Of a stretch of DNA of 64,000 nt, positions 16,321-60,499 are shown piece by piece. The DNA lies in NCBI GenBank assembly GCA_023213395.1, contig CM041465.1:200763741-200827740 (forward strand). Reading direction: 5' to 3'. The notes beneath the pieces were generated by a model. The model was not told the DNA's origin. It searched no databases and saw only the letters and a program-made list of their open reading frames with translations. A program made the translations under genes and the position numbers. Source of the DNA: Cycas panzhihuaensis. Its lineage: Eukaryota; Plantae; Cycadophyta. Numbering within the stretch: position 1 is the first letter of the stretch; the number at the start of each line of letters is the position of its first letter.

Positions 16321-17585
16321 AGCTAGATGTATGGCAAAGAGATGACCATACTCCACCCTAGTCTATCCTTAAGGAAACCCATAAAGGGTAGAACTTTTAG
16401 CATATATTTCAATTCTAAAAGTCTAAAAAATAATCCAACAATAATCAGCCAATGAAAAGAAATAATTCTAAGCTAAAATTACCTTCAAGACAGCATGAAA
16501 CAAGCTTGAAAGCCCATAGGAAAGATCTTACCAACTCCAAGGAAGTTTGAAGCAAAAATTGATGAAGATCCAAAGAGATAAAAGCTTAGACCATCAATAA
16601 TTGAGTAGTAGTAGCACAACAATAAAACTTCTTTGAGATTTCACCTAATAACTTCAAAAAATCAAGTCTCCAAGAACCACATCAATAGTCCTTAAGAATT
16701 CTCTAAGAAGTTCACAAAATCTCTCAATGAAAGAGCAAGAATCACTTCTTCCTCTCTAATTCTCAACTTTCTTTCCTACTATATTTCTCTCCCTTTCTCA
16801 TCAAAAACTATGATCAATAATCCCTTTATAACACTTTTGGGCATTGAGAGAGTCAAATCCCATCAAATTTGGGTGGTGGCATGTAAAATTTTGGTGTGGT
16901 AGCTAAATTTTACATGCATGCAGTTAAAAATATGGTGATTAGTTAGAAGGCAAAAATAACTCATTAAAAAGATCAAAAAATATTTTTTATTAATAAATTA
17001 AGGCATAAATGACTTTATTAATGAGGAGAGGGGCCCAAAACATGATGAAAATAATAAACACAAGCCCAAAAATGATAAAAAAATTAGGTGAAATCAAGGA
17101 TTAAAAAAATTTTAAAATAACAAACTTTGAAAGAAGCATAGGGTTAAGTTAGTCATAAAGAAAACTTTGTTGCCATAGTTTACATCATCTATGGAATGAT
17201 AAGAATACAAGCTATAATATCATTTATTACATTTCATCAATTAATAATCACACACCATTTCAACAAAACGAGACCCAATCCATCAAGTAGAATCAACATA
17301 CATCAATCACTACTAATAAAACCATATAACATGTATCAATTTACTAACATAATATAAATACAACTAAGGAGGCCAAGTTTTGGTGAAACATTTATCCCCT
17401 TGGCACTTGAGGCTCCTATTCTAAAAAGAGACATAAGATGGTAAGATGTGGTAATGATGTGAGTATTTGTTGCTCTAGAGAAAGTGATAGGGACTAATGA
17501 AATGTATGGATGATGGAGTACTATTTTTTATGGTGGGATGAAATCTATAATATAACTTGAGTCTAAAAACTTCTATTGGTAGAGT

Positions 17586-18430
17586 TACTCAAAATGATTG
17601 AGTAGTCTTAACCAAAAGAGGTGTCACTCATATTCCTTGCCTAAAAGGACTAGGCATCTATCAAATTACCTAAGAGGACTTGGTATCAATCACGTTACCC
17701 AAAAAGGGCTGGGTATTCAACTCTGTACCCAAAAGGACTAGGTATTCAACTTATAAACATCATTATGTTTTTCTTATCACCTAAAAGAACTAGGTACCTA
17801 CTGTTATCAAAAACTTACCTAATATTTACAAACTGGATGGGACCTTCACCTTCAAATAAGCACTATCTACTGTCCACAAATAGGATGGGACTTTATTAAC
17901 AAATGTCCACAAACTGGATGGGCTTCTAATATATATTTGGTTATAGTTTATCTCTCATTAACTGAGTATCATAAGAAAGTCTTTTTGCTAGAGCAAAAGG
18001 ATAGATTGTCAGCTTAAGCTCATTAACAAGTGATATTTTGAAGCAAACCCATCATAGTTTAGCCTTGTTAATGGGGTGAGGTCTTTTAGAGGGTGATTGT
18101 CATCTTTTAACCTCATTAACAATCGACTTCAAAGGGATCCCTATCATAGTTTAGGCTCATTAATAAGTATGGAGGTATCAGAGAAAACCCATCATAGTTT
18201 AGCCTCGTTAATGGGGTGAGGGCTTTTAAAGGGTGATTATCATGTTTTAACCTCATTAACAATCAACTTCAGAGGGATCCCTATCATAGTTTAGGCTCAT
18301 TAATAGATATGGAGGTCTCAGAGCAAGGTCTTATTATAGTTTATACTTATCGACAAGGAAATGGAAGGTCAGAGTTTGTTGTCCTTTCCTAGTTTAGACT
18401 CATCAATAGGTACCTAAAAGCTCAGAGTGA
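17586..18430 (-). repeat. Three consecutive families of short hairpin repeats in the Tat 3' UTR, including a 140-bp higher-order duplication (18041-18180 / 18181-18320)
   Basis: Plus-strand loops AAAAGGACT (6 copies), CAAACTGGA (3 copies) and CATAGTTTAGGCTCATTA-like (10 copies), most closed by 5-6 bp inverted stems. Confidence 0.9.
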
Positions 18431-19269
18431 TTACTTGTCTCCAAACCTTTTATCCCCCCTATTCTCATTTATATTTGAGCATAGGATGCATTCGTTAGTG
18501 TGATTTATCCAATAAAATATATAATGATTTTTATTATTTTTATACTTTTTCTATTCTTTTATGGTTACATAGTTTTTCGGTATTTTTTGTAATACTATAT
18601 ACATGGTAGTTTATATTCATTCTAGAGTAGAATGGTTTAAGAAAGATAAGGTTAGGGGAGGAATAAAAACTAAAACTAGGAGATAAATAAAAGATTAAAA
18701 TGGGGTAAGTTAAAGGTTTACTTATTCTATTTTCATAAACTTAAAATCATCTGGAATATAAACAGTAATAAGTTTATGAAAGAAAAAGATGGAGTAATAT
18801 AAATCTCCAAAAAGGAAATCCATATAACTCACATCATACTCTTGGTAGATTATATAAATATAGGATAATCCCACACTTATATAATATATCATAAAGGAAG
18901 TAAGTCATTTAGTAAATGAAACTAATCTCACTCAATAAATGACTAACTACCTGAGTATATTAGATTCTTCATTGGCTCCTTCCAAGAGCAAGAAGCTTTT
19001 AAGAACTTGCCCCCTACCAAGATCCTCCATGGCCCAAGATTCCCACGTGGGTCTAGCCCTTTCACATATCTCGCTTAAGTCTCATACCTATCATCACAAT
19101 CTCATGACTACCCAAACCTACAGTCTTACCAAACTAATAGTTTATACTCATTGCAGAGTGGTGGTTTATACTCATTCTAGAGTAGGGTGGCCCCAATTAG
19201 AAGAAGAAAAGTCAATCAATACAATCATCAAGGATTGAGGAAATTATAGCGTCAGCTTTGAGATTAAAG

Positions 19270-19900
19270 GAACATGGTACATAATGGATAATTACTAAGG
19301 TAAATAGGGACAACAATGATGAGGGCTGATGATGCAAAGAAAGGAGTCATAGAGAGTGGACTTGGTACATCCTAACTAACTAATAAATCACAACCTCAAA
19401 ATTGACATACAAAGTAATAGGCCCAAGATAAAAGTAAGTGACATCTGATAAGGCTCCTATAATTGTAAAATATTAAACTTCATTATTGATTGCTCTAGGT
19501 ATAAAGAAACCTGTAAAAAGGAGGGGACTTCCTAATTGGTCATAAACCACCCAAGCAGAAGTAGACGGTCTTGGGTTTCCTCTACTACCCCGATCGATGA
19601 AGATACTCAATGTCATGAGAATGAGAGGATCTAAACTAGGAGACTGTGTGATCAATGAAGGAAGGTGCAAGAATCAATCAGTAAGGAGATGGTGGTAGAA
19701 ATAGATCTTTGACTATGATGAAGTAAGAAAAAGAAACCTAAGTAAGATAATTATGATCAAGCTCTCAATTAGGGTTTGATTGTAACTGAGGCCACGGTGG
19801 ACCCAAGCAGCTAGATCTGAAAATCCTAAATGACTCATCCAAATGAACCCAACCTATAGATAGATAGGTGGTGATGAAGCCATCATGCAAGTTGCACTAG
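19270..19900 (-). pseudogene. Additional archaeal-type RNase HI (aRH) with N-terminal extension, disrupted
   Basis: LSIFIDRGSRGNPRPSTSAWVVYD..FFIPRAINNEV matches the DG.SRGNPG..G..TNN.AEY motif of aRH. Confidence 0.85.
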
Positions 19901-20777
19901 ATTACAAGAGGATGAAAATAATAAACTTAGTTTTTACTTTCTTTCAACTTTTTTTTTTTTCTTTGTTTCTTTTTTTGCTTCACTTTTTCTTTTTTCTTTT
20001 TTTTTTCTTTTTTACTTTTCACTTCCACTTTTCATAAGAACAAGATCATAATTATCTTCTTAAAAAACTCTTCTACTTAACACAATAAGGATTTCTTCTT
20101 TTTATTAAAATCTTAAAAGGGAAAAGGGCCAATCTCTTTAAAGAATAAACCATGAGAAGCAAAAAAGAAAATAAAAAACATGGTGTCTCCAAGTGTGAAG
20201 GGAAAGCAACAGAATGAGTATATGTTTCGAAGGAATAATAAAGAGAACTAAGGATAATAAAAATAATCAACAATTGGTGGTATATGACTGAAAAGGGAAT
20301 CCCAAAGTTTACTAACTAGCAAGTAAAAGTGAGGTCTGAATTAACAAGGTAACAAACTGACAAATAAAAGTAAACTCTCGATGGATGAGTGAATACTCGA
20401 AGCTAACAAGGGGTGTTTCTCTTTCTGATATGAAAGTATAATAAAGGTGGGGATGTAGGTCCTCTTTTGAGTGTAAGACTCAAAGGAGAACAAGATCCAA
20501 ATGATGGTAAACCCACAACCAATGTAAGTACTAGAAAGAGCACATAATTTACATGATTATGGGCAAGATCTATCACAAAAACACCACAATGCTTAACGAA
20601 AGGAAGAAAGTATCAGAAAGAAAGGAAGATTTTTCCCATAATTTTAGCTCATTAGACAAAGATATAAGTTTTCAAGCAACTAATATTTTGAAAAGAAGGG
20701 ATTTGCCCATAGTTTAAGCTTATTAGGTAGGGGTATTAGCTTTAGAGCCGTAGTTTATTCTTGTTGTGTGCATGCTG

Positions 20778-21980
20778 CTAAGCATAAAACATTCTCAAAT
20801 ATTGAGAATTAATAGGTCTCTTGAACTCTAATCCTTCCAATGTTGAAATTTGGTAGGCTCCATTAATTAAGTCCTTAATTACCAAGAAAGGTTCTATCCA
20901 TTTAGGAGAAAACTTCCATTGCCTATCGTGCAAATAATCCAATTTCAAAACCTTGTCACCCACATTAAACTTTCTAGGAATAAGTTACCTATCATGTATA
21001 GCTTGAACCCTAGATTTAGACATGGCATTATTTTGTAAGGCTTACAAGTAAGTCGTATCTAACTTCTTTAGCTCCAAAAGGTGAGCTTCCCTTTGGAACT
21101 ACTTATCAATAAATTCCTTCAATGAGATGCATAGAGAAGGAATTTTGACCTCTAATGATAAAATAACTTTAACACCATAAACAAGAGAGAATGGTATCAT
21201 ACCTATAACATTTCTAATGGTAGTCCTATAGGCCCATAATGCAAGAAACAACTAAGAGTGTTAATCCCTATGAGAAGTAGCAATAGTCTTAGCTAAAATA
21301 TTAGCTAAGATCTTATTAAATGCTTCTACTTGGTCATTCACCTAAGGATGATATAGGGCAGATATCCTATGAGTAATATGAAACTTACTACATAGTTCAC
21401 TAAGATGGTGATTACAAAATAAACTTCCATTATCAGTAATGATAATATCCAATATTCCAAATCTATAAATAATATACTAAAGTATGAAAGTAGCGATGAT
21501 CTTTCCAATAACGAAGACTAATAAGATAGCTTCACACCATTTCGTAAAGTATTCAGTTATAGTTAGAATGAATTTATGCCCATTTTAAGATGTTGGAAAG
21601 ATCTGTCCAATGAGGTTAAGGCCCTATTGGGAGAAAGGCTAAGGTGAAACTATGGATTTCATTTCTTACATAGGTTGATGGATTAAAGTTATGTGGGATT
21701 GGCATTTCTGGCATCTCTAGATGAAAGAGTGGGCATCCTTAAATAAGGTAGGAAAAAATAACCTATATGAAGAATGTGTTGGGCCATTGATCAACCACCA
21801 AAATGTCCACCATATATACCTTCATGATATTCTTTTAAAGCAATTAAAGATTCATCAAGTGAAAGACACCTGAGTAGAACTCCATCAAAAGAATGCTTGT
21901 ATAAGGTATCATCTAACAAAAGATACTATCTAGCAGTAGCACGAATTTGTCTTCTCTTCTTTGAGGTAGTAAGAGATGGA
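20778..21980 (-). pseudogene. gypsy integrase with GPY/F tail, disrupted
   Basis: HEGICGGHF zinc finger, IITDNG, LWAYRTT, TGMIPFSLVYG, and GDKVLK..KFSPKWIEPFLV..NGAYQI..INSQYLRMFYA. Confidence 0.9.
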
Positions 21981-21999: not shown

Positions 22000-24900
22000 T
22001 ATTAGAATAATGCCTATTGGGGCTCATATCTACCTAGGATTTGTTACCCATATTGGAGAGATAATTGAGATATTAGCGGAGATATTATTATGACTCTATG
22101 TCAGACCTTAGCTACACATTATTAGATCTTGGCAACATCCATTCTGATGTTTGTCAATTCCAGTCAGTGATGGATATTGAGTGGTGTGTCACATCCCATT
22201 CACATCCCACTTATTTATCTATGGGGTCTGATGACCTTGTTATTAATTAATATTTCCATTCTATCAGATTGTTAATTTGCTCTTTCATACATTCTCCATA
22301 CTCCCTCTATCCCCTGATTCCATCATTTGGTATTAAAAATAGAGTTTAGGAATTCTAATCTTAGTTCAAGCATTTGAAGCCATCTTCCTATTACAAAAGT
22401 AATTATTCAAGAGCCAAGTTTGAAGAAGTATTTGAGAAGTCAAAGTTATGAAAGAAGTCTTATGAGGAGTTTTTATCACATGTATTACCAATACATTTGA
22501 GTTATCAATCAATATTTCTTTACTCATTTTCATAAGTTTATTTTTCTTAAATGCTATCAATCATTTATATCTATTGGTACTCTATTTGAAAGAAGTTTCT
22601 TCCATTATATGCTTGAGTGTTTCATCTAATCCATGTGAAGGAGATCTCACTATTATGAAGCCTGACTCATTACCAACTTATCTTGCCTAGAGAAGTAATT
22701 GCTTTGCCTTACCTTGTCTCATTTCTTCTCATAAATTCTCTATATTTATGTGTCACTTATATCTGTATGAAGGCTCTACCTAGCTTGTATTTACATCTGA
22801 TCCTTCCCCTTAGCATTAGTCAATCCATTACAAATCCATGCATTTGCATCCATAAGAGAGTGTCTCTATTCGTTTGTTTATAAACTCTACTGGAGAAAAG
22901 AGTGCTTCCATTGAAGGCACTGATGATCAAATAATATAGTCATAGTTTTTTAAGCATCATTGAGTTAATCCCTACATGGACTACATCCTCTTTCTGCTAC
23001 TACATGGACTATATCTATTTTTTGCTTCTACAGGCGATAAAGTTAACCAAACAAATGACATTCTCAACTATATATGGCTATCATATTAGCTTCATAAGCT
23101 ACATAGCCAAATGACCAATGGCTACATATTGCTTATTTTTCAAAATTGTATAGGCACAAACATATTTCTAGCATTTGGTGAATAACTGCTACTAATTTGG
23201 GGTCATTTTCATACGAATATTATTTTTAGGAATTTTTCCTACTACACTCTTACCATTTATGCTTATATCTATGTTGTTCAAATATTATTTTAAAATAGTT
23301 GAGCTTTATTATGTCACTATCATTATAGATGCATCCTTATTATTACAACTATTTTTCACATGCAAAATATTTTTAATATTTCACTTTACAAAAGTTTGTG
23401 GTACATTATAATTCTTTAGTGATGATTGAAAAAAAATATTTTGCATCCTTTCTTTGACGTATTAATACATTTTTACTTTCATAGATTTGCACATAGAGAT
23501 TTATGTCATATAATGAATTCATTTAGTATTACTTTAATTTCTACTTCTACATGTATTCATAGTTATGCAAGCATATTGTCTATAGTCTATGTATGCATTA
23601 TTTCATCTGCAAAATAATCTATTTGCATTAATGGACTTTTCATTTAATTATATATATTAAAAGAGGCTAATTTTTCTTGTGGTCCCCACATTTGAGCTAT
23701 TGACAATATGCACCCAATCATTGTTCAAAAAGGATCTGTTGTAGGTTATATGTAGCAGTTAAAGTGACCTAGTTTAGTTTTTTCAGAGGGGACCAAGGTA
23801 TTTTTTCAAGTTGTCATTTAAAGATAAGATCTATTTCTACTTTGATAGCTATAATTTTCACCAATTGAGTCAAAAGTTAGTTTAGACAACATCAACTTAG
23901 AGTTCATTCTCATGTGGTTGAATAAGTAATCACATGGCCATATTCCATTTTAGTTTGATATACTTTTTAATGAGTTAAATTGATGCAAACTTTATTTGAG
24001 TCTTTGATGTTAAAAGGCCAACTTTTTGTAAAACATTTTCAAATATATCTTAAGCATTTAATATCAAAATTTAGTTATGTTTAAAATGTTGGACTCTATT
24101 TTCTGTCCTATAGTGAGTGGTAAAGACTTTAAATTTTTTGGGATTATCTTATATAATATTTTTATGCTCAAAAGTGACACTAATGAAGGACTTCCTGCAT
24201 GATGTTCCTTATTTAAACTAGTCAAAAATCAATTTGTAATCCCCCACTAATATAAAATATTATCTTTTGAGGTGATAAAAGTCCCAATTAGGATATTTAT
24301 CTTAGTCCTAGAGGTGAAATGGGACACATCTTGTGTTTTTTGAGTATATCTCTATTGTCTTTTTAGTGCTTTTAGTTAATTTTATTTTAAGCACTTTTTA
24401 CATTTGAAAAGTTATTCTTTCAAGGCAATTTTTTTACTATGGCATGGAATATTGGAAATATAATAGTGCCTATATTTAATGGTATAAACTTTCTTAGTTG
24501 AAGTAGGTGAATGAAGCCTATTTTTATTACAAAAGATGTGGGTACTTATTGATATAGGTTATGGTTTGATTGATGAAGATGCCACTGAGGATGAAAGGAA
24601 ATACTATAAGGAGAATAAGAAGAAGGATAATGAGGCACTTGTACTAATCTTTTGTCAATTAGAAGACCATATCTTTTCTAAAGTCAGTGAAGTTGTAACA
24701 TTAAAGGAGGCTTGAAACCCACTCAAGACAACTTATGAAGGAGTTGCATCGTCTAAACTATATACCTTAAAAAGTAAATTTGAAAATCATAAGATGATAA
24801 CTCATGAAGGAGTTAATGAGTTTATTACTAAGGTCAAGGATTAGTTAACTAGATGAGATCCTAAGGAGAAATGATTAGTGGACAAAAAGTTGTTGAAAAA

Positions 24901-27900
24901 ATTCTAAGATATGTAGGAGATATCAAGAGGTTTAAAATGGTGGCCAGTAGTATAAAAGTATCTAAGGACCTTGATGCACTTAAAATAGATCAACTAAGTG
25001 CTATACTTCTAGAAATTGAAGAAAATAAAGAGGGAAGTAAATCTCTTAAGCATGCCTTTGCCACAGAGGTAAGAATTAGGCCCAATTACGAAGGACAAAA
25101 TTTTAGGGAGACAAGACAATCCCCTAGAAGTAGAGGCCAACTAAGAAACTAGTTTCATAGATAAAGTTATGGTTTCCAAGGTTATCATTAAGGTTATTAA
25201 ATACAAGGATAAAACAACTATTAAGGACAAGGCCTAAATCAAGGTTATCAAGGGCTAAATCAGTACCAAGGTTAAAGGTACTATCAAGGCCAAGGTTAAG
25301 GCCAAAATTTTAGACCTCAATGAAGAGGAAGAGGTCAAAGTCCTAGGGGGAGAAATCAAAGTCAAAGAGGTAGGAATCCAAGAGGTAGAGGAACTATTCA
25401 ATATTCCTACTATCATAAGATTGGTTACTTGGAAGAAAATTATTTTGCTAAAAGGTCAAGTTCATAAAAGGGGGCAACTAATATAACTGTAGAAGAAAGA
25501 CATGATGATAGATTATTTCTTTTAAGTCTAATGGTCAATGAAGAAGAGGATAGCTAGTATATTAATTTAAGATGTTCCACATATATGACACATAAAGAAG
25601 AGTGGTTTAAGGAGTTATATTTAGAGATAACACCACTTAAGTAGTAATTGAAAAAAGAAACGTCTCCATAATAATTAATTTTAGAGAAACTAAAAGTATA
25701 AATGATGTCATACATATTCCAACTCTTAAAAGAACTTACTTTTAGTGGCTTAGATGATGGAGTAGTAATATAAAGTGGTCTTTGATAATAGAGAATGCAC
25801 TATCAAGGATAAATTAAAGAATAAGGCAATTGTAGCCAAATTCTAAATGACTAGTGATAGGTTATTTAAACTAGGCATACTACCAATAAATTATTATACC
25901 TTAAAGGCATCAACAAATATGAGTAAAACATGGCACAAAAGACTTGGCCATATAAATTATAATAGTTTGGCCTTAATGAAAATAATTAATATAATAATTA
26001 GACTTCTTATTATAGAACTAAGCAAGAAAATTTATGAAGGTTACATACTTGGAAAGTAGCAAAGGGAAGGATTTCCTAATGAAAGTTATAAGGATAATGG
26101 GCCTCTTTAATTGATATATACAGACTTATATGGTCCAATGGATGTGCCCTCACTTAGAGGAGCTAAGTAATTTATAACTTTTATTGATGACTTTACAAGG
26201 ATGACATGGGTCTACTTCATCAAATTCAAATCAAATGCTCTACAATGCTTTATAGACTTTAAAACTTTTATAGAAAGGCAAAGTAGATTTAGAATTCTAA
26301 CCCTAAGATTAGACAATTAGGGATAATTCATCTCAAATGAGTTCAAAGCTTATTACAATTATTGTGGCATAAGAAAATAACTCACTAATCCTTATACCCC
26401 ATAGAAAAATGGGGTTGATAAAAGGGAAAAAAAAAATTATAGAAATGGCAAGAAGTATGCTTAATAATAAGCATCTAAGAAGTGAATATTGGGCAAAAGT
26501 TATACACATAGTAGTTTATATAATGAATAAGTATACTACCAAGGCAGTTAGGTGGGTTACATTAAAAGAAGTTTAGATAGGATATAACCTAAGTATAAAA
26601 CACTTAAAGAATTTTTAGATGCATAGCTCATAAACATATACCAGAACAAAGAAGAACTAACTTAGATAATAATAGCATCAAGTATATTTTTATAGGATAT
26701 AGTGACTCATCTAGATCCTATAAACTATATGATCCAAAAAGTAAAAAGTTAATTATGAGTAGGTATATCATCTTAAATTCATCTTCTTTAAAGATGATAT
26801 ACCTACTTGTTGACAAGGATAAAGAGAAAAGTATCATGGTTGAAATGGAATCAAACTCTAAGGGTACAAATATACCTAATCCAAATGAAGTAAGACCCTC
26901 TACATCAAATTAATAGGCCCTTAAGTAGGTACAAAGGCTACATGACCCTTCAAATATTTTAAACACCAACTTTGATAGAAGAACCACTAGGTCTCAAAGG
27001 GTGAATTTTGTATTAATGAATCAAGTTATAGAGTATAATGAGTCTCACAACTTTAAAAAGGATAACACACAAGATGAATGGAAGGAATCTACGAAGGATG
27101 AATACAATGCCTTAGTAGAAAATGATACATGGGAATTAGTGGATCTACCACCAAATAAAAATGCAATTAGAATGAAATAGGTCTATAATACTAAGCATAA
27201 GTTATATGGAACAATTGAAAAATACAAGGAAAGGTTAGTTGTTAAAGGTTATGCTCAAATTAAATGCATAAATAACAATGAAACTTTCACACTAATTATA
27301 AGACTAGAGATAGTTAGATTGATAATGGATTTAGTTACACAATAAGGTTGGACAATTCACCAAATAGATGTTCAAAGTGCTTTCTTAAATAGTTATGTGG
27401 AAGAAGAAATATATGTCTAATAAATAAAAGGTTTTAAAATTAAGGGTAAAGAAAACAAGGTCTATAGACTTAAAAAGTCCTTATATGGGCTTACACAAGC
27501 ACCTAGAGCATGGTACTCTAAGATCAACAAACACTTTAAGGATAAAGGGTTCTAAAAGAGTCAATCTAATCCAAACTTATACATCAAGATAGAAGAAAGC
27601 TCCATATTTATTGTGGGCTTGCATGTTGACGACCTAGTATACACTGGGAATGATGTTTATTTGTCCCAAATATTAAAAAAGAATATGTGTAAAGAGTTTG
27701 AGATGGTAGATTTGGGACTAATATATTACTTATTAAGCATAAAAGTTTGACAATATGAAAATAAGATATTTATTTCCCAAATGAAATACATATTGGAATT
27801 ATTATACAAGTTCAACATGGGTAATTATAAGCCACTTACAACTCTAGAAGAAGTTGGGATAAAGTTATCAAAACTTGAGGAATTAGAATTAGTTGATCCT

Positions 27901-28872
27901 ACACTCTATAAGCAATTAATTGGGAAGTTTAATTTACTTAATTTTAACTTGACAAGATATTATGTATGTAGTTAGTGTAGTTTCTAGATTTATTCATGAG
28001 CCTAAGATAAAATATTAGCAAGTAGTAAAGAGAATTCTTAGGTATCTAAAGGGTTAGTTGGATATACAGATTTAGACTGGGTAGGTTGCATAGATAATAG
28101 GAAATCTACCTCTGGATGTACATTTAGTTTGGGTTTAGCTATAATTGCAAGAAGTTATAAGAAATGGGTCATAATATCCATATCTATTATAGAAGTAAAG
28201 TACAAAGCAATTATAGCACGAGCATATAAAATAGGCTAGCTTAGAGGGTTATCTAAGATTTATAGGAAGAATAGGTTAGTCCCACTTAGATGTTTTGTTA
28301 TAATCAAAGCATAATTCAGATGACTCAAAATCTAATGTTTTATAGTAAGACAAAATACATTGAAACACAACAACACTTCATCAGAGAGTTGGTATAACAA
28401 GGCAAACTAGAATTAGTCTACTATAACATAAAAAAATAGGTGGCTGATATATTCACTAAGTTACTTAGTAAGATAAAATTTATAAAATTTAGAGATAAAC
28501 TTGGAGTCTCCCCAAATAGGCATTATGGAGGAGAAATATTGAAATAATTCCCATTGAGGCTTATCTCCGCCTAGGGTTTGTTACCCATATTGGAGAGATA
28601 ATGAAGATATTGGCAAAGCTATTATTTTGGCTCTATGTTAGACCTTAGCTGCACATAGTCACATCTTATCAGATCTTGGCATCATCCATTCCAACATTTA
28701 TCAATGACAGTTGGTAATGGATGTTGAGTGGTGTGCCATATCTCACTCACATCTTACCTATTTATCTATGGGGTCTAATAACCCTAGTTTTCATTAACAC
28801 TACCATTATATCAAATTGTTAATTTTCTCTCTCATGCATTTTCCATGCTCCGTGTGTCCCTTGATTTCGTCA
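22000..28872 (+). mobile_element. Ty1/copia element C, full length, degenerate; LTRs 22000-22325 and 28537-28872
   Basis: LTR pair sharing TTGTTACCCATATTGGAGAGATAA, decayed PBS TGGTATTAAAA, PPT ATGGAGGAGAAA, and degenerate TSD GGTAT/AGCAT. Confidence 0.92.
24439..28530 (+). pseudogene. gag-pol: copia gag-pol, heavily disrupted
   Basis: WHKRLGHIN, ITFIDDFTRMTWVYF, LVENDTWELVDLP, MDVQSAFLN, LYGLTQAPRAW, TKYIETQQHFIRELV. Confidence 0.92.
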
Positions 28873-32600: not shown

Positions 32601-33799
32601 AAGCACATGCTAAGTTTGTAATGCGTTTGGTTTTCTAGGAATTCTTACATTATTTATAATAGTCCTAAATAGGTCTAATTGAACTTGAATAAGGATTATT
32701 AAGAAATTAATATATTGATTATAGTTAGATAAATAATTAGAGAAAATGAGTAATTAATTAATAATCTTAAAGATCATTGTGATTGGTCAATAAGATATGA
32801 TATTTAATTATATATGTATAAAATATTATTCAATCATATGGTAAAAATATCATTAGAATTAATACTTTTAGTCTTTACCCTTGTTTATTAACCTTTGGGC
32901 CATTACATTGGTATTGTTTCCAACAATTTTTAGGGTTATCTAATTAGGTATCCTATGTTCTTAATGGTATACTCTATTATGGAAATGAATCAGTATGTCA
33001 TTTAGGAAGACCAATACAAAATTATCTAAGTAGGATCTAGAGATATTATACATCAAATACATGAAAGTTACAAATGCATTAGATAACCCAAATAATATTG
33101 TTGTAAATTTATAATTTTAAATGCCATTTTATGTGAATCATTTAATTTCATACAAATCAAATGATACCCTTTTGAGATAACTTCATGTCTAATCCATTGA
33201 GTTATCAATGTGTTATTTAGATCAAGGAAATAAAATATAAGTGACATGCAAACTAACTAAATCTAACCAAAAGAGATATTAAGAAATCTAACTTCAAAGT
33301 ATATAATAATATATAAAAAAAAATTAGTTATAGAGTTCCTTCATTTATTGCATATATCATTATATATATCAAATAAACAAACTACCAAAACATAAGAATA
33401 AAGATCCCATAATGATATATCAAAGAAAATTATTTCCCTGATTTTGGGTTTCTTACCCTCAATCTAGGAATTCCAAGTGTATTCACCGAGTCTCACATAT
33501 TAAATATGCATATGATATTTACCATTATCTTGATGTTGCATTTGATCACATGCATTTTCTTGTCATTTTTCTTCCATATGTATTTGATGGAGCATTTTCT
33601 TGTTTGTGTGTACATATCGTATCTCCCTTTTGTTAGTGATGATATGGGATATATCCCCAATAATAGATTATGTTATAGAGGTATAACTATATAGGTTGAG
33701 TTAATATACTTAACAATCATTGCCATGCATTTCTTACATTGCTTTTTTTTCTTATTTGTTTTATCTCATATACTTTATTTTGTTTTACATACTTTTCTT

Positions 33800-41274: not shown

Positions 41275-44200
41275 TAAAGGAATGATGGATCTAGGGAATA
41301 AATCATTCACATGCACATAATCGCAATGGAAAATGAAAAAGAGATGAAATAAGATATGAAAGCTAAGCTTGGAGGTGAGAATGAATAATGACTCCCTCCT
41401 TGAGATTTCACCTTTTATTATTGAGGGTGAGTATTAGGGTTAGGATTTTCCAGCCTAATGACATGAACCCAACATTACATCTAAATGCATATAAAGCACA
41501 TTTCATTAAGAAACTAATGCTAACAATATATCCTAAGATCACATAATTGATCTACATAAATGACCTTGATATATTAATCTCTTTCAATACCCCCCTTAAT
41601 GGTGGAAGGTTATTTTGAGAAAATCTATTGCATAAGGTATTCATTTAAGTCTCATTATTACATTGAAATTCTAAATGACACTTTTGCAAGAAAACCCTCA
41701 TGGGGAATAAAAATCCACAAACTTTCTAAAATCTATAGGCCCTTTTATAAATCAAAATGGCTAAGGTTGCTCTTTAATGTAGCCTGATAGCCAAGCAATT
41801 TAAATATGTAGCTTAATCTATAAAATCTCCATATACCATTTGGTCATCCCCTATGCCCTTTTAGGTTTTCATAGGTTCTGATTTTCCAAAACTAATACAA
41901 CCCTTATCCTTCCATGCCCATATGGGGTTTTCACAAATAGGATAGAATAGAGACTTACTCTTATTCGTCCACACCTATAAGGGGTTTTTATGAAGAGAAT
42001 AGAGTATGATGATTCTGTTGCCATCTTCTTTGATTAGTAAAAAATGGAGGCCCTAAGGCTGAGCTACCTTCAAAACTATTTAAACTTCACCTTTTATAGT
42101 GGTTTGGTGAAGATATTGGCTACTTGATCTACTATGGGACAGTATTCTAGTTGAATTATACCATCATGAACAAGTTCTCTAATCCTGTGGACTTTCGTAC
42201 TTATGTGTTTGGTATGATCATGAAATACAGGATTTTTCACCATGTGGATTGTTGATTGATTATCCATATGAATGCCAATAGGACTTGTTTGGGTGATATT
42301 TAATGTTTCTAATAATTTTCTAAGCCATATCACCTCCTTATTGGTCTTAGAAGCAGTAATGTATTTAACTTCGGTAGTTGAATTAGTAACTATCTTCTAT
42401 CATTTGGATCTCCATGATATTGGTGCTATTCCAAGAAATGTTATATACCTAGATATAAATCTCACTGTATCTTTATCTCTTATAAAGTTTAAGTTTATGT
42501 ATGTAGAAATCTTCTAATCTAAATTAGGTTCATATAATAGACCACATTTGTTAGTCATCTTAAGGTACCTCACACCTGCACTGCTACCTACTAATGATTC
42601 CACTTAGCATTTGTCATGTAATGAGTAAGAATACCAATAGAGTGTATAATATATGGCCTTGTATTGGTAGTGTAGATAAGACTACCTACAAGTTTCCTAT
42701 AGAGTGTTATATCTGCCTCCCTTATATCACCATCAGTTGAGAGTTTGGTATTAGGGTACATAGGTAAAGCCATTGGTCAAGCATCTTCTAAATGAAACTT
42801 GGTTAGAAGATCGTTGATGTATTTTTCTTGGGAGAGGAAAAATTTTCTATTCTTTTATGTTACTTTAATTCCCAAGTAATATTTCATCAAACCGAGGTAA
42901 GACAATTTGAATATTTTGCCAAGGTTCTTTTTTAGCTAGCTTATTTCTTGTTCACTATTACTCGTTACTAGCATATCATCCACAAAGATTATGGGATAAG
43001 TGACTTTGCCCTTTTGGTGCTTGATGAATAATATTGCATTAATATCTTGGTAGTCACAAACCTTGTATCTGAGTTGTCTCATTCTTTTAGACAACTCAGT
43101 AAACCAAGCACAAGGGGCTTGTTTAAGGCCATACAAGGACTTTCTGAGTATGAAAACCTTATGCTCTTGACCTTTGATCTCATATCCTTCTAGCTAAGCC
43201 ATGTAAATTTCTTCTGCAAGGTATTCATTGAGAAACATAGTCTTAACATTAAGCTGGTGGATTTTCCAACCTTGTTGAGCAATCAAGGCCATAAGAGTTC
43301 TAATTGTAGGTCACTTGGTTATAGATGAGAAGAATTTGGTGTAGTCGATGCCTTCCCTTTGTGTGAATCCTTTAGCTACCAACCTTACCTTATGTTTTTC
43401 AAGGGTGCAATCTAATTTACATTTATTTTTTAACATCCATTTATTTTTAACTACCTTTCTGCTAAGTGGTAGATCAACAAGCTCCCATGTACCATTCTTG
43501 ATAAGAGATTAGTACTCTTCATTTATAACATTTCTCCAAGTTGTATGCTTTATAGCTTCCTAATATGAGAGGGGCTCTTCATTAAGAGTAAGGTGCAGTT
43601 CTATCAGTTCAAGCTTAGCGTATAATGATTTCTATATCTTTGCTCTATGGGCACTTCGAGTGCTAGTTTTACCCACCTCATCTAGTCATATGTCTTTATT
43701 GAGCTAGCAGGCTTATTAAGATCCTCGAGTTGGGAATGAGGTCCTCATTTCCTCAACTTCTTAGTTCTCATCTTGTTCATTAAAATGGTTACTTTATGAG
43801 GAAGATGTTGATGTGCCTGAGGAAGATGGTCCTTCTACCATTGTTTTACCTTTGTCAACTTATGGTGGAGAGAATGATTCTTCTATAATGGCTTTGTCTT
43901 TGTCAACTCTGTTATCTTCAAAGGATGGTACTAGATATGCACTCATCATTTTAGAGTCACAAATTGTATCCTCTGAGGCTCTATTATCAGCTTCCAATAT
44001 TTGGAGTAATTTATGTATGTCCCTCTCTCCCCAAATTTTAGAATCTAAACATCACATTTAATAACATCATTATAGCAGTGTGACAGTATTTTAGAGTCTA
44101 GTCTAAGCAACTAATCCTCTATCTCCTCAGAAATGACATCTCTAGTAATGATAATTTTTTATTGTGAAGGTATAAAGACCTTATACCCTTTCTTATGCAT

Positions 44201-47200: not shown

Positions 47201-48845
47201 TGCACCTTCCTTAGGGCCCAGACTTTGGCTAACCGTGGTCTATTTCAACTAAGGTAAGTGTACGCATAAGTCAAGAACTGGTAGTATAGATTAAATGGAT
47301 GAGATTTCTTTTAGGGATGATTGAAAATTAAAATAGAAAGTTATTAAATGTTCTTGCTTACTTTTCATATTTGCTTTATTGTTGCTACTGCTTTATATGA
47401 TGCTTTATGCTATATGTGCAAATAGAAAAAGCATACTAGATTTAGTAGGGGAACTGGATGTTGCTTCCAATTCAAGGTTTCCCTTGCTTTTAATACAATA
47501 TTTCTAAATATATATTTTTTAAAATTTTAATACAAAAGCCACAATGGGCTAAAAAATAGATCAACTTGCCACTAAAATACTAATTTTTTAAAATCTAGAT
47601 GTATGTTAGTTTTCCCTATTTTATGATTTCTTTTATAAAATTTATAAATAATGATAAATAGGTAATTTTTTCTTAAAATTACAAATATGAAGGCCTAAAT
47701 GATGGAATTTAAATTTATGGAAGAAGAAAAAAGTGTTTAGAATATTATTTTTGATATAGTAGTAAAGTTAGATTTCTAGAAAGGCATAAAAATCTTTTGC
47801 CCAAAAAAAACACAAAAGCATAATCTTACTAGATCCACTATCTCAGAATCTAAACTTCAATATGTCAAAAGTTGCATCGTGACACATACATCAACTTTTC
47901 CTTCTACACCATCTATAAAATCAGCTAAAAATTTATCCAAAATGCTCTCACAATATCTTTTGTGGGGCTGAGTAGGCAAATTCGGCATCTGTGAGAAAAC
48001 TGCATAGATCTCACTAACTGGTGGATAAAATTTAATGATATTTATCTTAAAATGATCCTAATACATAAATATACCAGATCCCTTAAAAAAAATTTAGATT
48101 TGTAGCTTATGTTTAAAGGACTTCATTAGAAAAAATGCCAAATTTTAACCTTTCTCCTCAGCCAAAACTCACTCTTTTAGGCTAAATTTAAAACTACTCC
48201 AGAAGACAAAAATAATCCTCCTAGTATGGAAACCTTACATGCCAAATTTTATCAAAATCTGAGATGGTCAAAATTTTTATAAAATTTTAGGCCTTTAATG
48301 CTTCTGGGATTGTTCCGACAATTGAATGGCTTCAAAACCTGTATTTTTCACCTCTAAAATTTTACATATATAAAGAAAGTAGAAACATATAAAGTAATAT
48401 AATTTTAATCTCTCAAAATATTAAAAATGATGAGTGCACTCTCAATACTTCATATTGAAGGTGAAGGAGAGGCAAAATGACTCTATGCAAGTGGAATTGA
48501 GTGAATAGATCCTCTTCTAGATCTGATACCACATGAAGGAAGGATGGATTTAGGGAATAAATCACTTGTATATACACAATTGAAATGGAGAATGAAAAAG
48601 AGATAAAACAAGATATGAGAGCTAAGCTTAGAGATGAGAATGAATAATGACTCCCTCCTTGAGATTTCACCTTTTATTATTGAGGGTGAGTATTAGGGTT
48701 AGGATTTTCCCACTTAATGACATGAACCCAAAATTATATCTAAATACACATAAAGTGCATTTTATTAAGAGGCTAATACTAACAATATATCCTAAGGTCA
48801 CATAATAAATCTACACAAATGACCTTGATATATTAACCTCTTTCA
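41275..48845 (-). mobile_element. Ty1/copia element E, full length, nested in D; LTRs 41275-41586 and 48534-48845
   Basis: 312-bp LTRs about 88% identical by hand count, perfect TSD TGACT, PBS complement GATCTGATACCA at 48520-48531, and PPT AAGGGGGG. Confidence 0.95.
42030..46615 (-). pseudogene. gag-pol: copia E gag-pol, disrupted
   Basis: DTGATQ protease motif, HARMGHV, YGLKQAPCAW, FVDDMLV, YRKLVGSLIY, MDNQSTIHMVKNPVFHDHTKHI. Confidence 0.92.
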
Positions 48846-56500: not shown

Positions 56501-58269
56501 CATAAAAATTCTTTGATAAACTTAAATAAGCATTAATCTTGGCCCCCACACTTGACCTACCATGTTTTAATAAACCATTCATTTTATATACTTCTTCCAC
56601 AAAGGAATCTCTTGATGCCATGTTAGCCTAGGAAGATGAGTTTGTAAGAGAGCAAGCCATTTACTTTATCAATCGTACCTTAGTTGTCATAGATCTTAAC
56701 TACTCTTTATTTAAAAAAATATATTTAGCTTTGGTCTATACTACTAAAAGGCTATGGCATTAGCTATTGGCCAATACTACCCTTGTGATCATATAATCAA
56801 ATTTAATTCATCTTCACCTCACCAAAATTGACCTTATTAGATGAACTCGTAGATGGGTCTTATTATTGTAAGAATTCAACTTGTAGATGGTTAATTACAA
56901 GTCAAAGAAAGAAATGGCCATTATTAAGCAGCTTGTTATAGCCTCAATTCCTAACTATGATTTTATTCGTGTCAATGACTCACTCCTAGATGAACATATC
57001 CTTTAAGTTGACATTGTTTCCATCCATCCAGAATGGCATAAGGATATTTGAGCTTACTTCTTAGACCAAACATACCCTCCTAATGCTAATTCCAAGAAAA
57101 GAAAAGAGGGTAAGGGCCTCTTCTTATCAATACCTCCTCCTAGATGACTTATTATACAAGTGTTTCTTTGATGGGGCTTTACTACAATCCTTCTAAGCTT
57201 AGGTCACCCTAGTTGACTGCCATGATGACATCTATGGTGACCATTTTGATGGTCAGTCCACATCATTACATATCCTTCAAATAGAATATTACTGGCCTAC
57301 CTTATTTAAAGATGCATATTCATATATGTAAAAGTGTAAGAAATGCTAAGAATGCTCATCCTTAATTCATCAATTAGATACCTCACTTAGGTTAATTCTT
57401 ACACCACGGTCCTTTTCTCAATTGGGCCTTGAATTTATTAGACAAATTTATTCCCCATATTTTGTGGGCAATAAATTCATCTTAACTGTGACTAAATACT
57501 TTACAAAATTGAGTGAGATAGTTCCCTTAACTATTACAATTAGAAAAGTAATTGCCACTTTTATCTTCTAATATATCATTTACAAATTTAGTGTCCCCAA
57601 TGTCATTATTACAAATAATGGGACTTTATTTTATAACTCTCGTGTTGATGAGCTTTATGACAAGTTTTACATCATACATAGAACATCATCCCCTACCACC
57701 CATAGGAAAATGGTTAAATCAAAGCCTTTAACAAAGCCTTGGAAAAGATCTTGGCTAAAATAGTTGATGACTCCTAGCAAGATTATCACACTCAACATTT
57801 TCTTTCCCTATGGGCTTATAGTACTTTTATTAGAATTGTAACTTAGATGACCTCATTCTCTCTAGTATATAGGACTGAATCTATATTTCCCTTAGAAAAA
57901 GAGATACCTTCACTTGGAGTCTAACTTAAGCATTTCACCGATGAGGAATGGCTAAGATAAGTAAGGTTATTAGAACTTAAAAAGATGGATGAAACCTACA
58001 TTAAAGCTCATCAAAAGAACCTAGCCTCAAAAAATAGAGGTCAAGCAACTCATGATCGTCATTTGAGACCAAAGAAATTTTATGTAGGAGACAAAGTCCT
58101 TAAACTTGAATATTAGTATAAACAATAATAAAAGTTTAATTCCAAAATAGTATATCCTTATTTGGTCATTAAAGACTTGAACAATGGGGCTTATTATGTC
58201 TATACTCTTAATGGGCTTGAATTCTAGAAGCTAGTCAACTCCCAATTTCTAAGAAAGTGTTATGCTTAG
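53551..58269 (+). pseudogene. pol: Tat gag C-terminus, protease, RT, RH and integrase, disrupted
   Basis: VVEGSFLNII (PR), WVSNIIP..IYIDF..MSLMDDFLGYNQ..MLFGFKNAG (RT), PFILYTS (RH), HDDIYGDHF..LWAYST..GDKVLK (INT), ending TATGCTTAG. Confidence 0.9.
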
Positions 58270-59299
58270 CTAACCTAGCCTATGGTCTGCAATAAGCCTA
58301 AATTATGGCTTTAAAAATCCACCTACTAATGAGCCTAAACCATGGTAGGTCAAATACTTTTACCCCTAAGACTTGGAAGGCATGACTCTAAAATTAAGTA
58401 TAAACTTTATGTACATATGATATTTCCCAAAAGCACAAAAAAGAAAATAATAATAAAACCTTAAAATAATAAAATTAGACTTGTCTCTTACCTCTCCTCA
58501 ACTTGTCATCTATTTTGGACCCTCAAGTCTTTACTCTTCCCCCAACTTGGCTTAGTGTAATAGACCTTTCTCATAAATTTGAGTAGTTAATTTCTCCATT
58601 TTGTGCCACACTCTACCTAAGAAACTCTTTTCACTTCAAAGTAAGATAGATATATCCATAGCATTATCTCTCTTTCTTATTCTATTTAAATAGTGAATAG
58701 TTTCCTCAAAACTTTCAATAACCAAAGGATCTTTAAGCTCCTAATTAGCTAGTATGTTAAGCATCTAATAGTCTCTTCATTCATCCTTGATAGCTTACAA
58801 CTTATCCTCTAATAGGACGAGCTTTAGTTCTATGAGAAATCTTAGCTTTCTATTCCCCCTCTTAAAGAATTGTGTACTCAATGATGAAGTAAGCCCTATT
58901 GACTATACCCCTCCTACTCCTTAGTAGTTAGTTATTTAAGGCCTGTGCTTTAACTCTCAAAGACACTTTGATTAAACATCCTATAAATACCTATAGTTTA
59001 TCTCTCAAGAGTGTGACATTAATTTATTTATTGCTTATACTTTCTTAGGTATTAACTCCCCATGGTTTGGCTAATTATGACTATACTCTTCAAATTTATT
59101 AGTCATCCCCATCTAGTATACCTTAATAAAGATTGCATAATGATCATAGTTATATATTCTTTATTAAGCATGAGGATGGGTGAGATTCATTGTCTAGAAA
59201 GTGAGTTCAATGATGCTAAGCTCATCACAAACCTCATTTGAACCATTGTATGGATTGATACCCTCCCAAAGGAAAAGAAAAAAGAGAGAAAAAGAAGAG

Positions 59300-60060
59300 A
59301 AAATTCTTGTATATAGATATCAACACCCTCTTGGCATATGGGGTAAGCCATGTGTCAACTTCATCCCCACCTATAACATGCAATTTGAATATAGTTATGT
59401 GTGTTGTTCATGAGCTTCAAATCTAGTTTCTTAGGTCCACCATAACCATAATTATGATTGAAACCATTTGACATTTATAAGGTTATATATTAGCTTTAGA
59501 AAAGGTAGTTATGGTGATGAAACCAAATATAGGGGTTCTATCTTTCATGATTAAACACTTGAAGTGCAATTATTTAAGCTAACTTATACCCTTGACTATT
59601 AATTCACTAACCTTCCTCTTATTCATTAACTTGTCTCTAACCTTTTGTCCTTCCCTCCCTATAGCCTTACATGTTTATACTGATGGTGGGGGCAGAGGTA
59701 ACCCAGAGGTTTCTACTATAACATCGGTCGTACATGATGACAGGATCACTATCCTTTTTAGTGTCAGTTTTTTCATACCATAAGTAACTAATAATATAAC
59801 ATAATACTTAGTTTTAATTAGAGCTCTTATTGATGTGCTTTACTTTTATAATGGACTAATCAACCTTTTTATAAATTCCCAAATCATAGTGTCCTAACTC
59901 ATTCATACTCATCAAACTTGCTCAAGTAACTTACATCATTTGTTTAGTACTACCACCTCTTTATTAGTACAATTTAGATCTGTTACTATTCAATGCATCC
60001 TAATAACTTAAAATGTTAAAGTTAACTCACATGTTTCCCACATAATTGATGACTATCACT
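59300..60060 (+). pseudogene. Additional archaeal-type RNase HI (aRH) with N-terminal extension
   Basis: LHVYTDGGGRGNPEVSTITSVVHDD..FFIP*VTNNIT*Y; homologous to 19270-19900. Confidence 0.85.
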
Positions 60061-60499
60061 TATAGCATAAACATGATAAACTAGGGGCATCTATTACTTT
60101 GAATTTATGTTAGAACAATCTACGACTCTCTCAAGACATCCACTTGGGAGCATTCACTCTCTGTAATAAGTATAAATTACAATGTTGAAAAGCTATTTAC
60201 TAAAGAGTCTAAACTATGGTAGTCATGTCCACCCCTAATGATGGATCCCTCACTTCTTAATGAGGGTAAACCATGGCTCAGAAGGCCCCATTTACTAGAG
60301 CTTAAAGTATGGTAGTCCCCATCATATACTTGCAATGGATGTCACCCCTTTGAAGTCTCATACACTTAAGATATATAAGATGGTTACTAATGAGATAAAA
60401 CTTTAGCAGGTCTTAAAACCTCTAAAAATCAACCACTAATAAGGCTAAACTATGGTGGGTATACCATTGTACATAAGTCCTTTGTATTGTGGGGTTTAA

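What the first reader, a model, noticed from the sequence alone, without database searches (positions are those of the whole stretch)
17939..18430. Array of hairpins with a conserved 18-nt loop and co-varying stems in the Tat 3' UTR (candidate new structured-RNA element)
Seen: on the element's sense (minus) strand, about 10 units recur every 44-60 bp. Examples are CCCAT-TAACGAGGCTAAACTATG-ATGGG (loop 18193-18210), GATTGT-TAATGAGGTTAAAAGATG-ACAATC (18095-18124), CTTAT-TAATGAGCCTAAACTATG-ATAGG (18140-18167) and CTTGT-CGATAAGTATAAACTATA-ATAAG (18330-18357). Stem sequences differ between units yet stay complementary. Loop length and loop consensus are fixed, and a linker CTCTGA recurs between units. 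The variants imply a pre-deamination loop of about CGACGAGnnTAAACYACG. Inference: this is what selection on RNA or ssDNA structure looks like, not plain satellite amplification. It could be a multivalent protein-binding array (Gag packaging, export, translation control) or a processing site. Tandem repeats in Tat/Ogre 3' UTRs are known; I do not know of a description of this structure.
Basis: partly seen in the sequence, partly recalled or inferred. Interest (0 to 1): 0.85.

Follow-up and report, generated by a model that had tools for sequence, protein, structure and literature searches.

The report
Conserved-loop hairpin repeats in Tat retrotransposon tail
A dead plant retrotransposon carries about ten copies of a small hairpin whose loop is nearly fixed while its stems change in matched pairs. 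The same hairpin follows the ends of its genes and those of a diverged second copy, so it is probably a selected RNA signal that nobody seems to have described.

Summary
At 17939-18430 (minus strand) ten units, 44-65 bp apart, carry an 18-nt motif (TAAYGAGnnTAAACYATG) flanked by 4-7 bp inverted repeats, with a recurring CTCTGA linker. Six of the ten are one 140-bp three-unit block duplicated at 92% identity, so there are only 4-5 independent stem types.

Stem complementarity is unit-specific. 81.5% of cells pair, against 69% when shuffled and 29-48% when partners are slid. Swapping flanks between units and neutral duplication-plus-deamination simulations never reach the observed value.

The motif also lies just after the integrase and RNase H stop codons of this element and of a second, diverged Tat element (58290-60460, plus strand). 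It is always on the sense strand. It is better conserved (82-86%) than the coding DNA (58-66%). No Rfam family matches.

Best reading: a selected, protein-binding RNA hairpin module of a TatIII-like (gymnosperm-type) family, amplified here inside the known Tat 3' tandem-repeat zone. Its function (RNA stability after stop codons, packaging, export) is inferred, not shown.

Caveats:
- The hairpins are thermodynamically weak.
- Most compensatory changes are transition pairs.
- Only two decayed copies could be studied.

First readers of this scan noted the same motif in at least seven other windows of this genome (unchecked).

The parts
17939..18430 (-). Tandem array of ten hairpin units (E, D, A1, B1, C1, A2, B2, C2, F, G), each made of a CTCTGA-type linker, a spacer, a 4-7 bp stem, an 18-nt loop and the matching stem
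18044..18323 (-). Higher-order repeat: a 140-bp block (A-B-C) present twice at 92% identity
18188..18215 (-). Unit C1, stem CCCAT/ATGGG, the most stable array hairpin (-7.6 kcal/mol alone). 82% identical to the unit at 60432-60459 in element 2
18095..18124 (-). Unit B2, 6-bp stem GATTGT/ACAATC
18280..18307 (-). Unit A1. 86% identical to the hairpin after the integrase gene of element 2 (58322-58349)
20631..20766 (-). Three motif copies right after the integrase stop of element 1: a stemless copy at 20749-20766 (11 nt after the stop), a decayed hairpin at 20708-20725 and a B-like hairpin at 20637-20654
20778..20984 (-). Integrase C-terminal piece of element 1 with its stop codon at 20778-20780
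19212..19673 (-). RNase H (aRH)-like region of element 1. N-terminal piece at 19476-19673, stop codon at 19212-19214
19136..19177 (-). Two adjacent stemless motif copies, each preceded by CTCTR, 34 nt after the aRH stop
18605..18622 (-). Further stemless motif copy with the same 5' flank as the one at 19160-19177
58290..58350 (+). Element 2: a stemless motif (58290-58307, 20 nt after the integrase stop at 58267-58269), then the best hairpin in the window (6-bp stem, 58321-58350, -8.3 kcal/mol)
59583..60065 (+). aRH-like region of element 2, stop codon at 60063-60065
60164..60459 (+). Element 2: six motif copies after the aRH stop. Loops at 60164, 60201, 60258, 60296, 60388 and 60437. Four have stems of 4-5 bp

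Best explanation
The unit is a cis-acting hairpin of the element's sense-strand RNA. A short stem of free sequence (5-6 variable pairs plus a fixed U.G and A-U) presents a conserved, roughly 14-nt single-stranded loop (AYGAGnnUAAACYA). The loop probably binds a sequence-specific protein.

The module belongs to a TatIII-like family, with the RNase H placed after the integrase. One or two copies follow each stop codon, and further copies fill the long non-coding tail.

In this dead copy a three-unit block was duplicated, giving the ten-unit array inside the tandem-repeat zone known for Tat and Ogre elements.

Shown: the motif, its strand, its positions, its conservation and the unit-specific stem complementarity.

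Inferred: that it acts as RNA and binds protein. The most likely role is to mark the termination context and stabilise a genomic RNA with a multi-kilobase 3' UTR, as the RSV stability element does. The next most likely role is to supply multivalent Gag-binding sites for packaging.
For: - Structure: 81.5% of cells pair against 69.2 +/- 2.3 shuffled (0 of 500) and 29-48% when partners are slid. There are 28 double-change cells against 10.7 +/- 3.5. RNAalifold finds the same hairpin on its own.
- With one unit per stem type (11 units), 41 of 55 Watson-Crick pairs form against 23.3 +/- 3.8 after swapping flanks, P<1e-4.
- Neutral duplication-tree simulations with a deamination bias never reach 41 (0 of 14,017).
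- Of 72 chance occurrences of the motif in unrelated DNA, one has a stem of 4 bp or more. Here 12 of 17 do.
- All covariance-model hits with E<0.2 lie on the sense strand of the two Tat 3' regions.
- Between the two elements, aRH DNA is 58% identical, integrase DNA 64-66%, the post-integrase non-coding stretch 76% and the hairpins 82-86%. Apart from integrase and a 35-bp chance-level match (E 5e-4), blastn aligns only the hairpin.
- Motif copies start 11-34 nt after three of the four stop codons (integrase and aRH, both elements). After the aRH stop of element 2 only a partial copy lies 2 nt downstream, and the first full copy starts 98 nt downstream.
Against: - The hairpins are weak, and most have low pairing probability in context. 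The array folds no better than shuffles.
- Six or seven motif copies have no stem, so the sequence alone may be the signal.
- Nearly all compensatory changes are C-G to T-A transition pairs. G.U and A.C mismatches are equal (5 and 5), so nothing favours RNA over DNA.
- Independent events are few, and they come from two decayed copies.
- No transcript, binding or expression data could be obtained.
Confidence: 0.55

Rival explanations
1. This is an ordinary hypervariable tandem repeat of a Tat 3' region. A conserved linear sequence motif is the only selected part. The flanking inverted repeats are a by-product, for example of hairpin-induced template switching by reverse transcriptase, which also creates the tandem copies.
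For: Tandem repeats in Tat and Ogre 3' UTRs are well known and are ascribed to illegitimate recombination or abnormal strand transfer (PMC7004042; PMC6317226). Stemless motif copies exist. The stems are weak. At least two other short hairpin-like tandem families lie next door at 17640-17930.
Against: Stems differ between units yet stay paired far beyond the swapped, slid and neutral-simulation controls. The same stem types, with their loop dinucleotide, persist in two elements whose coding DNA is only 58-66% identical.
Confidence: 0.25
2. The hairpin acts in DNA rather than RNA. It could be a single-stranded DNA hairpin during reverse transcription (priming or strand transfer), or a cruciform or protein-binding site in the integrated copy.
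For: Watson-Crick complementarity fits DNA as well as RNA. G.U-type and A.C-type mismatches are equally frequent, 5 each. Sireviruses have precisely placed inverted repeats at the PPT/LTR junction (PMC2829016).
Against: The conserved U.G closing pair (14 of 17 units) stabilises only the sense strand. Placement right after stop codons suggests a link to translation. A double-stranded DNA site for a dimer would keep its half-site sequence, which varies here.
Confidence: 0.1
3. It is a self-cleaving or processing element (hammerhead-like), or a C/D-box small RNA precursor.
For: The loop begins with a UGAUGAG-like string and has a GAAAC-like string after two bases. CUGA recurs in the linker. Weak C/D snoRNA hits lie nearby (E 0.3-7).
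Against: No Rfam hit reaches any gathering score in the window. No ribozyme family hits, even at E<=10, over either 3' region. The position matching the essential G of the hammerhead GAAA is T in 16 of the 17 aligned units and A in the other, never G, and there is no helix II. The snoRNA hits do not overlap the array.
Confidence: 0.03

Closest known systems
Hypervariable tandem-repeat region in the 3' UTR of Tat/Ogre/Retand elements (Macas 2009; Vondrak 2019, PMC7004042; Neumann 2019, PMC6317226)
   Same: Short tandem repeats between the coding region and the 3' LTR of Tat-lineage elements, with monomers of tens of bases.
   Different: The papers I could read describe sequence-variable repeats made by replication errors. 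The searchable Tat papers never use the words hairpin or stem-loop. Here the repeat is a hairpin with a fixed loop, it also occurs singly after stop codons, and it is conserved between diverged elements. Macas 2009 itself is not in the library, so I could not check it.
Conserved non-coding motifs of Sirevirus (Ty1/copia) elements (Bousios 2010, PMC2829016)
   Same: Highly conserved short motifs in many copies within the non-coding regions of otherwise very divergent plant LTR retrotransposons, some symmetric or in inverted repeats.
   Different: It is a different superfamily. Those motifs are extra PPT copies and CGG-CCG boxes in the LTR (DNA-level regulatory candidates), not loop-conserved hairpins after ORF ends.
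Rous sarcoma virus RNA stability element (PMC2925335, PMC5580461)
   Same: A structured RNA element directly downstream of a termination codon in a retroelement RNA with a very long 3' UTR.
   Different: The RSE is a single element of about 400 nt in an animal retrovirus. There is no sequence similarity, and function here is untested.
Dispersed packaging signals of HBV pgRNA and ssRNA phages (PMC8677749)
   Same: Multiple stem-loops with variable stems presenting one short loop motif for multivalent coat-protein binding.
   Different: Those are spread along the genome. Here they cluster in the 3' tail, and no Gag binding is known.

Membership tests
Tat lineage (TatIII-like) Ty3/gypsy LTR retrotransposon | RT followed by integrase on one strand | tested here: met
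   RT pieces at 32964-33256 (RVT_1, E 0.009) and integrase pieces at 21102-21251 and 20781-20984 (SH3_Tf2-1, E 0.013), all on the minus strand. The integrase C-terminus is 62% identical to a Ginkgo biloba protein.
Tat lineage (TatIII-like) Ty3/gypsy LTR retrotransposon | Extra archaeal-type RNase H (aRH), located after the integrase as in TatIII | tested here: inconclusive
   Pieces from both elements each hit solved RNase H chains at E 0.04, and the C-terminal N..AD..D motif is readable. Pfam gives nothing for the short decayed pieces. The region lies 1.1-1.3 kb after the integrase stop rather than fused to it.
Tat lineage (TatIII-like) Ty3/gypsy LTR retrotransposon | Flanking LTR pair, PBS and PPT | tested here: not met
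   No LTR pair was found for either element by blastn. There is only a candidate PPT at 16745-16757 followed by TG. So '3' UTR' is inferred.
Tat/Ogre 3' UTR tandem-repeat region | Tandem repeats downstream of the coding region | tested here: met
   TRF finds a 140-bp unit repeated twice and a roughly 48-bp sub-period, about 800 bp downstream of the aRH stop.
Any Rfam family | Covariance-model score at or above the gathering threshold | tested here: not met
   There are no hits in the whole window. Only sub-threshold snoRNA and miRNA noise appears at E 0.3-7, outside the array.
Hammerhead ribozyme | Conserved core CUGAUGA ... GAAA with helices I-III | tested here: not met
   No hammerhead hit at E<=10. 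The GAAA-equivalent reads TAAA in most units and never begins with G, and there is no helix II.
RSE-like stop-proximal stability element | Lies directly 3' of the termination codon of an RNA with a long 3' UTR | tested here: met
   Motif copies start 11, 20 and 34 nt after three of the four stops. After the aRH stop of element 2 a partial copy lies 2 nt downstream and the first full copy starts 98 nt downstream.
RSE-like stop-proximal stability element | Protects the RNA from NMD or deadenylation | not testable with these tools
   This needs reporter or RNA data.
Multivalent packaging-signal array | Several stem-loops with variable stems and one shared loop motif | tested here: met
Multivalent packaging-signal array | Loop bound by the element's capsid or nucleocapsid protein | not testable with these tools
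   There is no intact Gag in the window, and no RNA-protein test is on offer.

The most novel reading that the evidence does not exclude
The hairpin is a new RNA family: a portable 'ORF-end module' of gymnosperm Tat retrotransposons. One copy is placed after every stop codon and arrays fill the tail. It would recruit a host or Gag protein to shield a multi-ORF genomic RNA with a kilobase-long 3' UTR from nonsense-mediated decay. It may also be the joint at which extra genes (aRH, or the PMD noted in other windows) were added.
Probability: 0.2. Interest if true: 0.8.

Novelty: new variant of a known kind. Interest (0 to 1): 0.55.

Why it matters
Very few cis-acting RNA signals are known for plant LTR retrotransposons, although these elements make up most of large plant genomes. 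A small hairpin that is more conserved than the element's own genes would give two things. First, it would be a handle on how Tat elements manage a multi-ORF RNA with a very long 3' UTR (stability, packaging or export). Second, it would be a sequence-plus-structure marker for annotating this lineage. It would also recast the 'hypervariable' Tat tandem repeats, a known source of plant satellites, as amplified functional modules rather than pure replication errors.

Tried and rejected
- External copies. A two-motif pattern scan of metagenome contigs gave three unrelated hits: a 22-bp satellite, a 60-bp duplicate without stems and a chance pair. A single-motif scan of viral contigs gave 73 single chance hits, which I used only as a negative control. 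A Ginkgo integrase fragment found no relative in viral contigs.
- LTRs. No LTR pair was found for either Tat element.
- Pfam. Nothing for the aRH pieces.
- Ribozyme and snoRNA readings. Rejected.
- Inner loop pairing and a CCTC/GAGG pseudoknot with the linker. The inner pairs are not kept in all units. The CTC/GAG partners never vary, so they cannot be tested.
- Three-frame stop cassette. The TAA, TGA and TAA of the loop are all in one frame.
- Long-range partner. No reverse-complement copy of the loop lies on the sense strand of either element.

Full report
**What is there.** Read on the minus strand, 17939-18430 holds ten units. Each has a CTCTGA-type linker, a short spacer, a 4-7 bp stem, an 18-nt loop of the form TAAYGAGnnTAAACYATG, and the complementary stem. 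With up to three mismatches the motif occurs 13 times in the window against 0.32 expected.

**How independent the units are.** TRF shows that 18045-18323 is a 140-bp unit present 2.0 times at 92% identity. This is a block of three different hairpins (A, B, C) that was duplicated. The two copies differ at 11 sites, 7 of them transitions. The array therefore offers four clear stem types: A, B, C and D. Three degenerate flank units remain: E is shifted, F has a 16-nt loop and a 4-bp stem, and G has a 19-nt loop and a 2-bp stem.

**Context.** The window is AT-rich (about 31% GC) and full of decayed retroelements. No ORF of 120 aa or more survives between 10 and 32 kb.
- On the minus strand lie RT pieces (32964-33256) and integrase pieces (21102-21251). 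The integrase C-terminus at 20781-20984 has its stop at 20778-20780.
- An RNase H-like region spans 19212-19673. It hits solved RNase H chains at E 0.04, and its stop is at 19212-19214.
- A Copia element on the plus strand is nested at about 22000-28870.
- A second Tat-like element lies on the plus strand with the same order of parts: RT near 55917, integrase up to the stop at 58267-58269, and RNase H at 59583-60065.
- RNase H placed after the integrase is the TatIII arrangement, which is reported from gymnosperms (PMC6317226). The closest named relative of the integrase tail is a Ginkgo biloba protein at 62% identity.
- I found no LTR pair for either element. There is only a candidate polypurine tract at 16745-16757 followed by TG. 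'Downstream of the last ORF' is shown; '3' UTR' is inferred.

**The motif is not confined to the array.** Pattern and covariance-model searches find it only in the 3' parts of the two Tat elements and only on their sense strands.
- In element 1, a stemless copy starts 11 nt after the integrase stop and a decayed hairpin about 50 nt after it. Two stemless copies start 34 nt after the RNase H stop.
- In element 2, a stemless copy starts 20 nt after the integrase stop. The best hairpin of the window (6-bp stem, 58321-58350) starts 51 nt after it.
- Also in element 2, six more copies follow the RNase H stop between 60164 and 60459.
- The stemless copies share a CTCTR box directly in front of the motif.

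**Conservation between the two elements.** Apart from the integrase gene and a 35-bp chance-level match (E 5e-4), blastn aligns only the hairpin.

| Region compared | Identity |
|---|---|
| RNase H DNA | 58% |
| Integrase C-terminal DNA | 66% |
| Non-coding stretch after the integrase stop | 76% |
| Hairpin pair A1 and 58322-58349 | 86% |
| Hairpin pair C1 and 60432-60459 | 82% |

The motif is thus better kept than the genes.

**Is the stem real?** I aligned 17 units (A1) and counted pairs for an 8-pair helix.
- 81.5% of cells pair. Shuffled 3' letters give 69.2 +/- 2.3% (0 of 500 reach the observed value), and sliding the partners gives 29-48%.
- 28 cells have changes on both sides, against 10.7 +/- 3.5 (0 of 500).
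- RNAalifold predicts the same hairpin without being told. It uses five variable pairs plus a fixed U.G and A-U, which leaves a 14-nt loop.
- Swapping whole 3' flanks between units, with one unit per stem type (11 units), gives 23.3 +/- 3.8 Watson-Crick pairs of 55 against 41 observed (P<1e-4). With all 21 non-redundant motif copies, stemless ones included, the figures are 54 of 105 against 32.6 +/- 4.2.
- Of 72 chance occurrences of the exact motif in unrelated viral contigs, only one has a flanking stem of 4 bp or more and none has 5 bp or more. Here 12 of 17 have 4 bp or more.

**The main caveat.** Nearly every compensatory change is a C-G to T-A, or G-C to A-T, transition pair. Cytosine deamination drives changes in that direction on both strands, and this genome is heavily decayed.
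- Half-changed pairs are symmetric (5 G.U and 5 A.C). This looks like neutral decay after insertion and says nothing about RNA versus DNA.
- I simulated neutral duplication trees with a strong deamination bias, starting from a perfect stem. At the observed divergence between units, own-partner pairing never exceeded 39 of 55 (0 of 14,017 runs reached 41).
- Neutral decay plus shared ancestry therefore does not explain the data. The simulation is crude, and the number of independent events is small.

**Thermodynamics are not impressive.**
- Alone, the units fold at -1 to -8 kcal/mol.
- In local context only two of eight array stems have high pairing probability.
- The whole array folds no better than shuffles (z = -1.4).
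- The copies are decayed, so this is a lower bound, but it counts against a self-sufficient structure. It fits a hairpin that needs a protein partner.

**What it is not.** No Rfam family reaches its threshold anywhere in the window. At E<=10 only weak snoRNA and miRNA noise appears, outside the array. The loop resembles a hammerhead core without helix II. However, the position of the essential G of the GAAA string is T in 16 of the 17 aligned units and A in the other, never G.

**Literature.** Tandem repeats in Tat, Ogre and Retand 3' UTRs are well known and are ascribed to replication errors (PMC7004042; PMC6317226). None of the Tat papers I could search mentions hairpins or stem-loops. Macas 2009 is not in the library and could not be checked. 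Sirevirus elements show an analogous set of conserved non-coding motifs (PMC2829016). The RSV stability element is a structured RNA placed right after a stop codon (PMC2925335, PMC5580461). HBV packaging signals are stem-loops that share a loop motif (PMC8677749).

**Reading.** The array is an amplified block of a family-wide hairpin module. The module was under selection while the lineage was active.
- Three features point to an RNA element that presents its loop to a protein: strict sense-strand orientation, placement after stop codons, and the conserved U.G closing pair.
- Among possible roles, I rank stop-proximal protection of a genomic RNA with a long 3' UTR first. Multivalent Gag binding comes second. 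Neither is tested.
- A linear motif with incidental stems, and a DNA-level hairpin, remain open.

- The single metagenome scan returned only chance hits.
- All evidence therefore comes from two decayed copies in one window.
- First readers of this scan noted the same motif in at least seven other windows of this genome, including 'after the end of each sense ORF'. These notes are unchecked leads. Only the part visible in this window was tested.
- I built no element consensus, no repaired frame and no deamination-corrected version.

Noticed in passing
window 17640-17800 (-): A second tandem family (29-bp period). Its units form hairpins of the type TACCYA...TRGGTA around a loop of about 9 nt, and one unit has the stem changed on both sides (TGCC/GGCA).
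   Followed up: partly
window 17830-17930 (-): Three copies of a roughly 19-nt box (CCCATCCAGTTTGTGGACA-like) about 40 bp apart, between the two hairpin arrays. The box contains a small TCCA/TGGA inverted repeat.
   Followed up: no
window 22000-28870 (+): A decayed Copia element is nested inside Tat element 1. Its LTR pair is 22000-22319 and 28537-28866 at 79% identity, and a GAG-pre-integrase-like piece lies near 25847-26059.
   Followed up: partly
window 19160-19183 and 18605-18628 (-): A roughly 24-nt string (CTACTCTAGAATGA...) containing the stemless motif occurs twice, 555 bp apart. This could be a segmental duplication or could mark the edges of an inserted piece.
   Followed up: no
window 16745-16810 (-): A purine-rich stretch of about 60 nt ends in AGAGAGGAAGAAG and is followed by TG. 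It is a candidate polypurine tract and 3' LTR start for element 1. No matching 5' LTR was found.
   Followed up: partly
window 41277-41586 and 48536-48845 (+): A direct repeat pair at 88.7% identity, 7.3 kb apart. It is probably the LTRs of another, younger element.
   Followed up: no
L075:700-2180: A metagenome contig with a long 22-bp satellite whose unit happens to resemble the motif (TAACAAACATAAACTATG). It has no stems and is unrelated.
   Followed up: yes
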